From: Octopus sinensis
Lineage: Eukaryota
Assembly (NCBI RefSeq): GCF_006345805.1
Contig: NW_021836919.1
Coordinates: 1-22,496 of the forward strand
Direction: 5' to 3'
Length of the DNA: 22,496 nucleotides
The notes beneath the pieces were generated by a model. That model saw only the letters and a program-made list of their open reading frames with translations. It ran no database searches and was not told the origin of the DNA. Positions 1-20,625 of this stretch are shown here, piece after piece (the stretch's first letter is position 1; each line of letters begins with the position of its first letter). Position numbers and translations under genes: made by a program.

Positions 1-141
1 GTTTTAATAACACGATTGTTGCTCTTCCAGGGCAAGATTACAAACACAACAGCGGAGACAGCTCACGTGCCAATATTGGTCGTCTACTTTCAAGAGGAAT
101 TTCTCTCGAATGATCTCGTTGCACCCCCCACAGCGCTTGCC
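1..141 (-). CDS. Awh: Internal coding exon, first LIM domain of a LIM-homeobox transcription factor (Arrowhead/Lhx6/8-like); runs off the window edge; in-frame TAA at 6-4
   Basis: Minus strand from 141, phase 0: GKRCGGCNEIIREKFLLKVDDQYWHVSCLRCCVCNLALEEQQSCY*. This is C-x2-C-x17-H-x2-C-x2-C-x2-C, the LIM zinc-finger pattern. LLKV, WHVxCLxCxVC and QQSC[FY]IK fit Awh/Lhx6/Lhx8 better than Lhx1/5, Lhx2/9, Lhx3/4, Isl or Lmx as I recall them. A strong acceptor precedes it. Orthology is by eye, and no homeodomain lies in the window. Confidence 0.88.
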
Positions 142-2699: not shown

Positions 2700-3347
<648 letters not shown>

Positions 3348-5578: not shown

Positions 5579-6160
5579 CGATGGGTACTGAGCGATGAGA
5601 AACTGTGCAGAACTCTGCTGGAATGATTGTAGCTGTTGATGAATAGCAGACTTAAAGGTCACCTTGTTTAACACCACTAATTGGCTCTTAGTTGACTGTA
5701 ACCGAAACCCAGCTGTTGCATATATTTGGATCTAGTCTCTATTCTGAGGATACCTTGATATTATAATACATTGATTCTTGCTGCAGTAACTCATGAGTTA
5801 TGATTTCTTCCAATCCTTGCCATTATTAAGTATTGGAGACCCTTCAAAGGGATCATTGACACTGCTTCTTTTCATCATTTGTAAAAGATAGTAAAATTCA
5901 AGATGTATTAGGTTAATATAGTGTTTACTTGCTCTTTTTTCTTTTATCAGTAAAAGAATAATAAAGGGCTCTGGAGGTCGGTGAAAAGTTGGTAGAATAA
6001 AGGTACTTAGATAATATTTGGAGTTTGTTTCAGGAATTTATAAGTATAAGAACAGTGACTTACTGTCTGAGTTAGTTCTCAGTCAACAACTTAAGTATCC
6101 ACATACCTATCTACCTTCATACCTACAAACCTACGTGCTTGTTTCCATATCTATCTAGCC

Positions 6161-6199
6161 ATGTATGTATGTATGTATGAATGTATGTATGTATGTATG

Positions 6200-6233
<34 letters not shown>

Positions 6234-6275
6234 TGTATGTATGTATGTATGTATGTACGTACGTATGTATGTATG

Positions 6276-6345
<70 letters not shown>

Positions 6346-6420
6346 TTATCTGTCTGTCTGTCTCTCCGTCTGTCTGTCACGCTCTCCCTCTCCCTATATA
6401 TATATACACACACACACATT

Positions 6421-6471
<51 letters not shown>

Positions 6472-6480
6472 TATATGTAT
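6161..6480. repeat. Compound microsatellite (TATG)n-(TATC)n-(TGTC)-(TC)-(TA)-(CA)n
   Basis: Direct repeats. Confidence 0.97.
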
Positions 6481-6630
6481 ATATATTTCTATTAGTTATC
6501 TGTTTGGTTAATATCTTGTTAATCATCTTTCAAAAACCTATTTGTAATAAGGCCAAAATATTCAATTTATTTGGTGAAAACAAAGTAAACCAAAAAATGA
6601 CGAATGTAAAGGAAAGAAACAGAAGAATGT

Positions 6631-6631
<1 letters not shown>

Positions 6632-6667
<36 letters not shown>

Positions 6668-6810
6668 TGATGATAATAATAATAATAATAAGATGATGAT
6701 GATGATGAAGAAGGAGAAGAAGAAGAAAGAAGAAGAAGAAGAAGAAGAAGAAGAAGAAGAAGAAGAAGAAGAAGAAGAAAAGAAGAAGAAGAAGAAGAAG
6801 AAGAAGAAGA
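6632..6810. repeat. Compound trinucleotide repeat (AAT)n-(GAT)n-(GAA)n
   Basis: Direct repeats; source of the poly-N/M/E/K pseudo-ORF. Confidence 0.97.
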
Positions 6811-7146
6811 GTATTAACAGTATTAACAATATCAATATTTTGATTGTACTAAGCAATTAAAAGTCTGCATTAAATTTCACTTCACACACACACACACACA
6901 CACACAACACGTATATATACAGAATTAATGATTTTATGGTAGTAAATATCCGCCATATTTCATAACAAACGATAAGAACAAAAGTATTAAGATTTAATCT
7001 AATATTTTTGCCTATTTTCCTTTTTCTTCTTCAAATTTAAAGTAAGACGTAAAAAAGGAAAAAGAAAAGCGATTGCCCTATAATATATAAGAGTAACAAC
7101 AAACGAAAACAAGATCAACGATCGCAAGAAGAACAACACCAGCAGT

Positions 7147-7177
<31 letters not shown>

Positions 7178-8537: not shown

Positions 8538-9089
8538 CAGAGTTATTAATAAAGAATGAGCCGATTTCGTTACGCAATATTTTAATAAGGAAAAGTAATA
8601 GAAGACTCCAGCTAAGACACAAGTATTTACTTACAATCAACTTTTATTTCCTGTCTCACAAGTGTTCAATATGGCCAACCACCTGCAGCATGGCAACATC
8701 AATGCGATAAGAGAATTCCACCCAGACGCGTATCAGCATATTATGATCTCTGAATTGATCGCTATTGTTATTCGATGTTTAAAATCACCGAGGTTAGCGG
8801 ATAGCGGTGGAACATAAACACGATCTTTTACATATCCCCACAAGAAAAAAAATCACACAACAGCGATCAACTCAGTGTATCGTGATATGCTGATACGTGT
8901 CTGGGAGGAATTCTCTTATTGCATTGATGTTACCCGTGCTGCAGGTGGTGGCAACATTGAGCACTTGTAAGACAGAAGTTGATTGTGAGTAAATACATGT
9001 GACTTAGCTGGAGTTTTCTATTACTTGTCCTTATTAAAATATTAAAATATTGCGTAAAGAAATCGATTTATTAATTTTGAATGACCTTA
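8538..9089. mobile_element. Fold-back non-autonomous Tc1/mariner element (DD41D rosa/Visitor- or DD37D maT-like) built from two inverted transposase 3' ends
   Basis: Arms about 8538-8772 and 8851-9089 are inverted copies (roughly 85-90% identical in the core by hand alignment). TA flanks both ends (8536-37, 9090-91). The + arm encodes TTAINSVYRDMLIRVWEEFSYCIDVTRAAGGGNIEHL*. The minus strand from 8850 encodes FFLWGYVKDRVYVPPLSANLGDFKHRITIAINS..., the segment that follows the last catalytic Asp. Confidence 0.9.
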
Positions 9090-9319
9090 TATATATTGTC
9101 ATATATAGAGACATACACCAACACACACACACCTACTCACATACACATACTCATACATATATATATATATATTATGTGTGTGTGTGTGTGTGTGGTGTGT
9201 ATGCATGTATGTATATATATAAACGTACATACACGTACTGCATATGCATCATACAAGTTTTCTAAATATTGATTTCCACCATTGAAACAATGTCACAAAT
9301 TTTGAGCGCAGAGGTTACA

Positions 9320-12401: not shown

Positions 12402-12460
<59 letters not shown>

Positions 12461-12735
12461 AATGACGACGACGAAAATGGTGTTGTGGTGGTAACGACAA
12501 CGACGACGATGGTGATGATGATGATGACGACGACGACGACGATGATGATGATGACAACGACGAAAATGGTGTTGTAGTGGTAACGACGACGACGATGATG
12601 GGGATGATGAGGATGATGATGATGACGACGACGAAAATGGTGTTGTGGTGGTAACAACGACGACGATGATGATGATGATGATGGTTGGCAATGGCGATGA
12701 TGGTGAAGAGGATGATGATGAGGTTGATGATGTTG
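12402..12735. repeat. (GAT)n/(GAC)n trinucleotide region with a three-copy higher-order unit
   Basis: Anchor ACGAAAATGGTGTTGT[G/A]GTGGTAAC at 12471, 12560 and 12631. Confidence 0.93.
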
Positions 12736-19747: not shown

Positions 19748-20625
19748 ACTCAGCATACGAAAGAAAGACTAAGTATGGGTAGGCTGCCCGGAAGCTTTGA
19801 AGAAGACAATAGAATTGATACGAAGCGCAGCCTCTCTTGGATACAAGAACCACTACATCACACTTTGAAGGCTATGCGTTTGCAATCCACGAATAGGTGA
19901 TTGCCGCAAAGTACTTGATGAACAAGACTCTCAGTGACGCTCTTGCAATTCCAAGGTACAACTGCATGTGTAGGCTATGTCATGTTTCTGTGAAAGACAT
20001 CACGCATGTGATTAATAGCTGTCCTAAAATGTCGTCAAGGTACTACATCCCTATGCAGCACGATGTTGTCGCTAAAGCAATTTACAATGCCATCCGCAAA
20101 AAAGATTGTCCTGAAACAAACTTTGAAAATCCCTCTGCTATGAAATACATTGATAAACACCAACTGAAGGAATAGTGGTGGAATATTCCCATCAAAACGT
20201 CATCAAATGTAAACTTAACAGGACGGATATTGTCGTTTGGGACTGTGGAGTAAAGGTACGTACAGCCATAGAGCTCAGCTGCGGATATAAATATTTCTTT
20301 GAAAATCAAAGGAAAAGAAGATATCTATGGAAAACTGCTTCGAAACTCAAGCTTGTATATCCGGAATATGAATTTATATTCATACAAATTATAATTGGAG
20401 CACTAGGTTTTGTTAGTAATGCTTAAAGGAGAATCTGAATAAACTGGGATTTTCAGAAAGAGAAATCAACTGGCTAATTCGTACATTGCAAGTGCAAAAA
20501 TGTGCAAGACTTTTCTCAAATTCCAAATGTGAATCTGTCTGTGTTAGCTACATCCCAAAGACAGAGACTTGTATCTTTGTTGGAAACTAGCTCCCTCTTC
20601 AGTGGAAGATATATAATAATTAAAA
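19748..20625 (+). mobile_element. Degenerate 3' fragment of an RLE-type non-LTR retrotransposon (R4/Dong-like)
   Basis: Across frameshifts and stops: TSHFEGYAFAIHE*VIAAKYL, CCHC knuckle CRLCHVSVKDITHVINSC (19969-20022), HDVVAKAIY, WWNIPIKT, KLNRTDIVVWD (RPD..D-type endonuclease, 20211-20243), IIIGALGFV, KMCKTFLKFQM* (stop 20530-32). A ~90-bp 3' UTR ends in tataataat. Confidence 0.9.

What the first reader, a model, noticed from the sequence alone, without database searches (positions are those of the whole stretch)
8538..9089. 552-bp fold-back transposon whose two arms are both the transposase C-terminus plus right end
Seen: ~235-bp inverted arms around a ~80-bp spacer with TA at both outer ends. 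Each arm encodes the ...RVWxEFSYxIDV...GxIEHL* end of a Tc1/mariner transposase, and the spacer continues the minus-strand frame (FFLWGYVKDRVY). Ordinary MITEs keep a left and a right end; this one has two right ends. Inference: either a deletion derivative of a long-TIR autonomous element whose TIR overlaps the ORF (I recall long-TIR relatives of the rosa/DD41D group from insects; verify), or a palindromic MITE born by template switching. If transcribed in the Awh pre-mRNA it forms a >200-bp hairpin. Such hairpins are established ADAR substrates and possible small-RNA sources, and coleoids edit RNA heavily.
Basis: partly seen in the sequence, partly recalled or inferred. Interest (0 to 1): 0.7.

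Follow-up and report, generated by a model that had tools for sequence, protein, structure and literature searches.

The report
Fold-back transposon with two right ends
This is a decayed 550-bp non-autonomous Tc1/mariner transposon made of two copies of the parent's right end joined head to head, a kind already described in mosquitoes, so it is real but fairly ordinary.

Summary
Window 8540-9089 is a 550-bp element with inverted arms of about 230 bp (8540-8768 and 8857-9089, 85% identical) around an 88-nt spacer. As RNA it folds at -294 kcal/mol (z = -32). Both arms carry the transposase C-terminus, the 3' UTR and the right terminal repeat. The spacer continues the minus-strand frame (CDFFFLWGYVKDRVY).

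The closest relative is a near-full-length 1.35-kb copy in the termite Cryptotermes secundus, 88% identical in DNA. Its terminal repeats are only about 41-45 bp and lie outside the ORF. This argues against a long-TIR parent.

The element is two right-end fragments of 320 nt and 233 nt, joined at a 3-nt inverted microhomology with no other sequence between them. This is the architecture of the Aedes MITE Goblin, which is explained by strand switching during gap repair.

At least six relatives in termite and marine metagenomes have the same two-right-end layout. One complex fold-back occurs at two different insertion sites, so such units do move.

Not settled:
- copy number in the source genome
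- whether the region is transcribed or edited
- the host itself; only a LIM exon on the minus strand was confirmed

The parts
8538..8539 (.). Left flanking TA, the putative target-site duplication
   Evidence: The canonical terminus CAG(G/A)GT starts at 8540, by alignment to L001, L002 and L083. The flank is TA-rich, so this is weak evidence.
8540..8859 (-). Long right-end fragment (320 nt) in minus orientation. It holds the TIR, the 3' UTR and the last ~67 codons of the transposase, starting at CDFFFLWGY.
   Evidence: 88% nt identity to L083 6846-7167 and to L002. Translation.
8540..8580 (-). Terminal inverted repeat of the left end. It is the 3'-type terminus.
   Evidence: Aligns with the 41-nt TIR of L083. 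The sequence just inside it (ATTTTAATAAGG...) is the 3' subterminal sequence, not the 5' one of L083.
8656..8859 (-). Remnant of the transposase C-terminal coding region with its stop codon (8656-8658). It contains one frameshift.
   Evidence: Homologues.
8769..8856 (-). Spacer, the hairpin loop. It is the part of the long fragment with no partner, encoding DFFFLWGYVKDRVYVPPLSANLGDFKHRI.
   Evidence: Compared with L083 it has 75 matches and 11 mismatches.
8857..8859 (.). Junction. The trinucleotide ACA can be assigned to either fragment, an inverted microhomology (TGT of the Cys codon, ACA of a Thr codon).
   Evidence: Alignment of both fragments to L083, read by eye.
8857..9089 (+). Short right-end fragment (233 nt) in plus orientation. 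It holds the last 37 codons from TTAINS, the stop at 8968-8970, the 3' UTR and the TIR (9049-9089).
   Evidence: 85% nt identity to L083.
9090..9091 (.). Right flanking TA, the putative target-site duplication
   Evidence: The flank is TA-rich.
1..141 (-). Context: a LIM-domain exon (Awh/Lhx6/8-like) preceded by a polypyrimidine tract and AG acceptor
   Evidence: Pfam LIM E = 2.3e-10.

Best explanation
Identity. The feature is a non-autonomous 'two-right-end' fold-back MITE. Its parent was a transposon of about 1.35 kb with short TIRs. The parent belongs to a Tc1/mariner lineage related to rosa/LTIR (Visitor). Its transposase has a DUF4817 helix-turn-helix, a DDE_3 catalytic domain and the CDFFLWGY motif at the third catalytic Asp.

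Origin (inferred). After an element excised, the gap was repaired by copying a sister copy. The nascent strand copied about 320 nt inward from the right end. It then switched strand, or snapped back on itself, at a 3-nt inverted microhomology (TGT/ACA). It then copied the terminal 233 nt again in the opposite orientation.

Consequences.
- The product has two copies of the right TIR and subterminal region facing outward, so transposase supplied in trans can move it.
- This copy is old. Each arm carries about 6-7% private substitutions, and the ORF remnants are broken.
- If the region is transcribed, on either strand, the RNA would form an imperfect duplex of about 230 bp.

Shown versus inferred. 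The anatomy, the homology, the short TIRs of the closest relative, the recurrence of the layout and the mobility of a related fold-back are shown. The repair mechanism and any RNA role are inferred.
For: 1. Both ends are 3'-type beyond the TIR. The arms align to the 3' 233-320 nt of L083, L002 and L001, including the UTR and coding region. The 5' subterminal sequence of L083 is different.
2. The closest near-full-length relative is L083 (Cryptotermes secundus NEVH01026108.1). It spans about 5817-7167. Only about 41-45 bp at its ends are inverted repeats. The ORF stop lies 120 bp from the end.
3. The two fragments abut with a 3-nt overlap and no foreign nucleotides.
4. Published precedent: in Goblin both subterminal regions derive from the right end of Ozma, with inverted microhomologies. 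The authors' model is template switching of the nascent left TIR onto the right TIR during SDSA, and they suggest that hairpin MITEs arise this way (PMC3814204).
5. The layout recurs in relatives:
- L084: 550 bp, TA-flanked, arms about 230 bp at 90-96%, junction within a few nt of the window's.
- L026 and L055.
- L085.
- L088: arms 363 nt at 96%.
- L089 and L090.
6. L089 and L090 share the same complex internal junctions, at 96.7% identity over 488 bp. Their flanks differ immediately after the terminal CCCTG-TA, so such units transpose.
7. A Mos1 element with two right IRs transposes 26-fold better in vitro than the natural left/right arrangement (PMC4505599). This gives a plausible reason why such derivatives succeed.
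Against: - No second copy from the source genome could be examined, so amplification of this particular junction is unproven.
- The 90%-identity clusters of the junction-spanning ORFs of four related fold-backs (P0289/L084, P0227/L085, P0284, P0169) have only one or two members.
- Three nucleotides of microhomology are easily chance.
- The arms are no closer to each other (85%) than either is to the termite copy L002 (88%). They form a star phylogeny with L002. Arm identity at birth therefore cannot be shown, although the arms share 6 states that differ from both termite copies.
- L084 was found with a query that contained the window's junction, so the similarity of the two junctions is partly ascertainment.
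- The TA flanks are uninformative in TA-rich DNA.
Confidence: 0.65

Rival explanations
1. Deletion between two neighbouring insertions. Two ordinary copies inserted head to head close together, for example by local hopping. A later deletion joined by microhomology removed both 5' parts and left 320 and 233 nt.
For: The arms show a star phylogeny with L002 and are only 85% alike. In the marine relatives, separate copies lie within about 85-90 bp of each other (L089, L090), so close pairs do occur. A 3-nt microhomology fits any end-joining event.
Against: The same outward-facing two-right-end layout, with highly similar arms (90-96%), recurs at six or more unrelated loci and hosts. One such unit sits at two insertion sites. 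Repeated chance deletions are less economical than a route tied to transposon repair.
Confidence: 0.17
2. Internal-deletion derivative of a long-TIR autonomous element. The parent's ~233-bp TIRs would include the end of the ORF.
For: A long-TIR clade (TIR above 460 bp) exists next to rosa/DD41D in aphids. Its transposase (HDGAPPHF..WIGRGG..WPPRSPDLTPMDFFVWGYLKERVY..GGHIEQLL) resembles this family (PMC5490172).
Against: The closest relative is 88% identical to the arms. The inferred ancestor of the arms differs from the termite copies at only 6 of 223 sites. That relative is 1.35 kb with TIRs of 41-45 bp outside the ORF. The deletion would also have to start exactly at the inner edge of the left TIR, because nothing but 3'-end sequence is present.
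Confidence: 0.07
3. The hairpin is a functional RNA locus, kept for that role rather than being a dead transposon. It would be an hpRNA or ADAR substrate, or a Mu-killer-like silencer of the parent transposase.
For: The predicted duplex of about 230 bp is very stable. Both arms carry transposase coding sequence. Octopus shows very high hyper-editing linked to dsRNA-forming loci, and palindromic repeats are edited on their own in frog (PMC5625713).
Against: The arms have drifted apart to 85% with indels. There are no compensatory changes to assess. Transcription is unknown, and there is no Rfam match in the window. Any hairpin-forming repeat would fold this way.
Confidence: 0.08

Closest known systems
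Goblin, a Stowaway-like MITE derived from the Tc1/mariner element Ozma in Aedes aegypti (PMC3814204)
   Same: Both subterminal regions derive from the right end of the parent and have different lengths. The junction lies at microhomologies that are inverted in the parent. The parent has short TIRs, and the product is a long-arm fold-back.
   Different: Here the duplicated right end reaches into the transposase ORF, with 37 and 67 codons on the two arms. The parent belongs to another lineage. Goblin is a documented multi-copy family, whereas the copy number here is unknown.
rosa (DD41D) and LTIR-like (DD40-41D) Tc1/mariner elements, also called Visitor (PMC5490172)
   Same: The motif ...PRS(C/P)DLTPxDFF(L/V)WGY at the third catalytic Asp and a C-terminal ...GGH... 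motif. The size (1.3 kb) and short TIRs are like rosa. The Apismar4.1 TIR (AAGGGTGTCTCAAAAAGAACGCCGGATTT) resembles CAGGGT(G/T)ATT(A/C)AAAAAGAATG..CCGATTT.
   Different: The closest near-full-length relative, L083, has 46 residues between the second and third Asp, not 40-41. It lacks the >460-bp TIRs of the LTIR clade.
Mos1 pseudo-transposons with two right inverted repeats (PMC4505599)
   Same: An element bounded by two copies of the right end is a valid substrate for a mariner transposase, and for Mos1 a 26-fold better one.
   Different: That is an engineered construct in another mariner family. The end preference of this family's transposase is unknown, and Mboumar-9 prefers its left end.
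Whole-element hairpin MITEs and fold-back elements (C. elegans PALTA/CeleTc families, Arabidopsis Hairpin, Drosophila FB, Galileo), as listed in PMC3814204
   Same: Almost the whole element is an inverted repeat, whereas the related autonomous elements have short TIRs.
   Different: There are no tandem subrepeats in the arms, unlike FB. Here the parental sequence of the arms can be identified to the base.
Mu killer of maize (inverted duplication of part of MuDR) and read-through dsRNA from Tc1 TIRs in C. elegans. Both are cited from my own knowledge.
   Same: A hairpin whose arms match the transposon's own transcript could feed RNA silencing of the autonomous element.
   Different: No expression or small-RNA evidence exists here. 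This is an analogy only.
Palindromic Harbinger repeat of Xenopus, hyper-edited by ADAR (PMC5625713)
   Same: A single near-palindromic DNA-transposon copy can form an ADAR substrate without a second inverted copy.
   Different: Editing is documented there and untested here.

Membership tests
Tc1/mariner (ITm) superfamily | Encodes, or derives from, a DDE/D transposase of the superfamily | tested here: met
   The C-terminal peptide finds 364 homologues. Longer relatives are named Tc1-like transposase DDE domain proteins and hit Pfam DDE_3 (E = 8e-7) and, weakly and below the Pfam cut-off, DUF4817. L083 carries the near-full ORF.
Tc1/mariner (ITm) superfamily | Terminal inverted repeats flanked by a TA target-site duplication | tested here: inconclusive
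   The termini are conserved with relatives. TA lies on both sides, but in (TA)n-rich flanks. TA flanks are clear in L084, L088, L089 and L090.
rosa / Visitor (DD41D) | 41 residues between the second and third catalytic Asp | tested here: not met
   L083 and L001 have 46 residues from QQD to CD|FFLWG. The third Asp was placed as in the Apismar4 sequences of PMC5490172. The window element itself lacks the second Asp.
LTIR-like clade (DD40-41D) | Long TIRs (above 460 bp) on a full-length element of 2.3 kb | tested here: not met
   L083 is about 1.35 kb with TIRs of 41-45 bp. Full-length copies from the source genome were not available.
MITE | Short (under ~800 bp), no functional ORF, TIRs | tested here: met
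   550 bp. It holds only C-terminal ORF fragments, one with a frameshift.
MITE | High copy number with homogeneous copies | not testable with these tools
   The source genome is not searchable. There is only one copy in the window. The 90%-identity clusters of the junction-spanning ORFs of four related fold-backs have one or two members. The junction 20-mer gave one chance hit in a phage contig.
Goblin-type two-right-end MITE | Both subterminal regions derive from the same (right) end of the parent | tested here: met
Goblin-type two-right-end MITE | Junction at microhomologies that are inverted in the parent | tested here: inconclusive
   There is a 3-nt overlap ACA (8857-8859), from TGT and ACA in L083. 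This is too short to exclude chance.
Drosophila FB-type foldback elements | Arms built of tandem subrepeats | tested here: not met
   Tandem Repeats Finder reports no array between 8182 and 9110.
ADAR / hpRNA substrate | Long intramolecular dsRNA | tested here: met
   In silico only: -294 kcal/mol, z = -32.
ADAR / hpRNA substrate | Transcribed, with clustered A-to-G changes or small RNAs | not testable with these tools
   No expression data are available.

The most novel reading that the evidence does not exclude
This transposon lineage may be predisposed to make two-right-end fold-backs. Strand switching would occur in a zone of roughly 100 nt around the codons of the third catalytic Asp (CDFFLWG). 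Seven loci from termite hosts, marine plankton and the window's host show the layout, and in four of them besides the window's (L084, L026, L085, L089) a breakpoint falls within about 30 nt of CDFFLWG. The window and a termite element from a different sublineage have junctions within a few nucleotides of each other. The products would be better substrates than the parent. Because both arms carry the end of the transposase ORF, they would also be Mu-killer-like hairpin sources of dsRNA that feed back on the autonomous element and are visible to ADAR.
Probability: 0.12. Interest if true: 0.7.

Novelty: new member of a known kind. Interest (0 to 1): 0.4.

Why it matters
How MITEs acquire arms much longer than the TIRs of their autonomous parents is an old question with few base-level examples. 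Here the parental sequence of both arms and of the loop can be read directly. The same layout recurs in the same transposon lineage in very different hosts, and one related fold-back is seen at two insertion sites. This supports the strand-switching route proposed for Goblin.

The locus is also a concrete place to look for hyper-editing or small RNAs, if the host is a coleoid and the region is transcribed.

Separately, the inferred ancestor of the arms differs at only 2.7% of sites from copies in a drywood termite. If the window is molluscan, this is a candidate cross-phylum horizontal transfer.

Tried and rejected
- Pfam on the 65-aa C-terminal peptide alone found no family. Longer relatives were needed.
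- A protein search with the LIM exon, meant to identify the host, found no candidates.
- An exact look-up of a 277-aa window ORF, meant to find the source record, found nothing on record.
- Rfam on the whole window gave no match.
- The junction 20-mer in viral contigs gave one hit. It is an isolated 20-nt match in a GC-rich phage contig, so it is chance.
- An arm 24-mer in genome contigs gave no hit.
None came from the window's host.
- I looked for a 5' TIR upstream of the solo 3' fragment in L002 and found none on the 15.5-kb contig. It is a truncated copy with a different breakpoint, not the same junction.
- I considered that the many 69-aa hits marked a last exon or a MITE-specific ORF. They simply start at the Met of SPDMTPC.
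- I considered that the window is termite DNA. I rejected this because no other repeat is shared with 356 kb of the fetched, mostly termite-host loci. Composition also differs: perfect SSRs make up 11.9% of the window against 1.1% of those loci, and GC is 34% against 40%.
- I considered that the arms are each other's closest relatives. This is not shown, because the phylogeny is star-like.

Full report
OBSERVATION

The inverted repeat is real. A gapped local alignment pairs 8540-8768 with 9089-8857. Counting substitutions only, the arms are 85% identical. The right arm also has an 8-bp insertion and a 7-bp deletion. The 552-nt RNA folds into a single long hairpin at -294 kcal/mol. Dinucleotide shuffles average -117 +/- 5.5 kcal/mol, which gives z = -32.

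The plus strand of the right arm reads TTAINSVYRDMLIRVWEEFSYCIDVTRAAGGGNIEHL*. The minus strand reads CDFFFLWGYVKDRVYVPPLSANLGDFKHRITIAINS. After one frameshift it continues ...MLIRVWVEFSYRIDVAMLQVVGHIEHL*.

Comparison with relatives fixes the true termini at CAG(G/A)GT...ACCCTG. The element is 8540-9089, with TA at 8538-8539 and 9090-9091. The right terminus has decayed to ...ACCTTA. The flanks are TA/CA microsatellite, so the TA dinucleotides say little. No other copy of the family is in the window, and the arms contain no tandem subrepeats.

WHAT FAMILY

The 65-aa C-terminal peptide has 364 homologues. Nearly all are short ORFs from metagenomes. Many are 69 aa long simply because they start at the Met in SPDMTPC.

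A longer query found proteins named 'Tc1-like transposase DDE domain' in Cryptotermes secundus, and hypothetical or uncharacterised proteins in Blattella, Periplaneta, a skink and a sea spider. These hit Pfam DDE_3 and, weakly, DUF4817.

The supplement of PMC5490172 shows that rosa DD41D elements carry ...PPRSCDLTPCD|FFLWGY at the third catalytic Asp. It also shows that an aphid LTIR DD40D transposase reads HDGAPPHF..WIGRGG..WPPRSPDLTPMDFFVWGYLKERVY..GGHIEQLL, which is close to this family. In L083 and L001, however, 46 residues separate the second and third Asp. I therefore call the family a relative of rosa/LTIR (Visitor), not a member.

THE CLOSEST RELATIVE AND THE LONG-TIR QUESTION

P0121 led to L083, which is Cryptotermes secundus NEVH01026108.1. 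It holds a near-full-length copy of about 1.35 kb, at roughly 5817-7167. The ORF is recognisable from MASPQQKAFCVLEFAK to GGGHIEHL*, although frameshifted.

L083's last 320 nt are 88% identical to the window's long fragment. The match includes the UTR and the TIR. Its inverted termini are only about 41-45 bp. The stop codon is 120 bp from the end. Inside the 5' TIR the sequence (GCTTCAGTTCTCAAGC...) is unrelated to the 3' subterminal sequence (ATTTTATTAAAGG...). Both ends of the window element carry the 3' version. This argues against a long-TIR parent for this lineage.

ANATOMY OF THE JUNCTION

Aligned to L083, the minus-oriented fragment runs from the terminus to ...TGTGT|GAT (the Cys-Asp codons), which is 8540-8859. 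The plus-oriented fragment starts at ACA ACA GCG ATC (TTAI), which is 8857-9089. The two fragments overlap by ACA and nothing else lies between them. The 'spacer' is simply the extra 88 nt of the longer fragment.

This is the architecture reported for Goblin in Aedes aegypti. There the two subterminal regions come from the right end of Ozma, with different lengths. They are joined at microhomologies that are inverted in the parent. The authors explain this by the nascent left TIR switching to the right TIR during synthesis-dependent strand annealing. They suggest that hairpin MITEs in general arise this way (PMC3814204).

A snap-back of one nascent strand on itself would give the same product. 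I cannot separate the two models.

RECURRENCE IN RELATIVES

All of these loci have two right ends facing outward.
- L026 (termite-gut metagenome): arms at least 126 nt at 94%, spacer 77 nt. The long fragment also starts at DFFLWGY.
- L055 (termite-gut metagenome): arms of 132 nt at 95%.
- L084 (termite-host contig, inside an MCM2 gene): found by searching the junction-spanning ORF. It is 550 bp at 2769-3316 with TA on both sides. Arms are about 230 bp at 90-96% and the spacer is about 82-87 nt. Its junction is within a few nucleotides of the window's.
- L085: a degenerate fold-back with a different junction.
- L088 (Tara Oceans): a 929-bp element with 363-nt arms at 96%.
- L089 and L090 (marine metagenomes): a zig-zag of four strand switches.

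L084's arms align to the window by BLASTN only in the DFFLWG region. It belongs to another sublineage that has longer coding relatives, P0165/L087.

L089 and L090 are 96.7% identical over 488 bp and share their internal junctions. Their flanks differ immediately after the terminal CCCTG-TA. The same fold-back therefore sits at two insertion sites and was mobilised as a unit.

Two cautions apply. L084, L085 and the L088-L090 loci were found with a query containing the reverse-translated DFFLWGY, or among hits later screened for that reverse-translated motif. Clustering of their junctions is therefore partly ascertainment. The 90%-identity clusters of these ORFs are also singletons or pairs.

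WHY SUCH DERIVATIVES MIGHT SUCCEED (INFERENCE)

A Mos1 transposon with two right IRs transposes 26-fold better in vitro than the natural left/right pair (PMC4505599). In L083 the outer 12 nt of the two TIRs differ.

AGE AND RELATIONSHIPS

Left arm, right arm and L002 form a star: 17, 15 and 9 private substitutions respectively. Against both termite copies, the two arms share only 6 fixed differences in 223 sites, and they carry 28 arm-private changes.

The source of the arms was therefore about 97% identical to the Cryptotermes lineage, and the fold-back has since decayed. This pattern does not distinguish identical arms at birth from two separate copies. That is why the deletion-between-neighbours rival keeps some weight.

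HOST AND CONTEXT

A LIM-domain exon lies on the minus strand at about 1-141, behind a good 3' splice site (Pfam E = 2.3e-10). Its sequence, CLRCCVC...QQSCY, looks Awh/Lhx6/8-like from my own knowledge. The element is 8.4 kb upstream of this exon on the gene strand. It is intronic only if the preceding exon lies beyond 9089, which I could not establish.

I could not verify the host. It is not the termite, for three reasons.
- No other repeat is shared with 356 kb of the fetched, mostly termite-host loci.
- Perfect SSRs make up 11.9% of the window against 1.1% of those loci.
- GC is 34% against 40%.

THE dsRNA IDEA

The predicted hairpin is strong. Octopus has exceptionally high hyper-editing linked to dsRNA-forming loci, and a palindromic repeat is edited on its own in frog (PMC5625713). 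For this locus, transcription, editing and small RNAs are all untested.

VERDICT

The feature is real and well resolved, and it belongs to a known kind: a Goblin-type two-right-end fold-back MITE. Its parent is a short-TIR relative of rosa/LTIR. The template-switch option is the best explanation. The RNA role is open.

Noticed in passing
window 8540-9089 versus L083 (Cryptotermes secundus NEVH01026108.1) 6846-7167 and L002: The inferred ancestor of the two arms differs from two Cryptotermes-type copies at only 6 of 223 sites, UTR and TIR included. The window's composition (12% SSR, 34% GC) is unlike termite DNA. If the host is a mollusc, this is a candidate cross-phylum horizontal transfer.
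   Followed up: partly
L089 1-49 and 134-939; L090 3-490 and 577-608: In marine (Tara Oceans and ENA) contigs, a complex fold-back with four strand switches occurs at two different insertion sites. In each contig another copy's end lies only 85-88 bp away, which suggests a very high local density of this family in that unknown host.
   Followed up: partly
L084 2767-3318: A 550-bp two-right-end fold-back with the same geometry as the window's lies among exons of an MCM2 gene (Pfam MCM2_N, MCM_N, MCM_OB) on a termite-gut-metagenome contig, presumably from the termite host, so presumably in an intron.
   Followed up: partly
L045, L074, L047, L055 (termite-gut metagenome contigs): These loci hold a conventional MITE of a sister sublineage. 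Its 5' TIR (which translates as ...IRNDCRGFNNL...) is fused directly to the ORF at PPRSPD, about 27 nt upstream of the window's breakpoint. Deletion breakpoints of several independent derivatives fall within about 50 nt of each other.
   Followed up: partly
L002 5840-6171: An unrelated palindrome of about 330 bp (arms 68 nt at 99% and 70 nt at 90%) lies 40 bp downstream of the termite solo 3' fragment. It is probably another fold-back MITE.
   Followed up: no
window 1-141, minus strand: The LIM exon reads ...EEQQSCY and then TAA 12 nt before the window edge. Lhx6/8-type proteins continue IK... at this point. Either the exon ends earlier at a weak GTGTTA donor or there is a sequence error. This is not resolved.
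   Followed up: no
window 19897-20426, plus strand: ORF remnants of a retrotransposon tail (CxxC...H...C zinc knuckle, ...NRTDIVVWD..., ...IIGALGFVSNA). From my own knowledge this is a type common in aquatic invertebrates. The only Pfam hit is a faint zf-RVT match (E = 0.49).
   Followed up: partly
window 12402-12732 and throughout: A 330-bp (ATG/GAT)n array with an 89-bp higher-order period, and many (TATG)n, (TATC)n, (AC)n and (AT)n arrays. Perfect SSRs make up 11.9% of the window.
   Followed up: no
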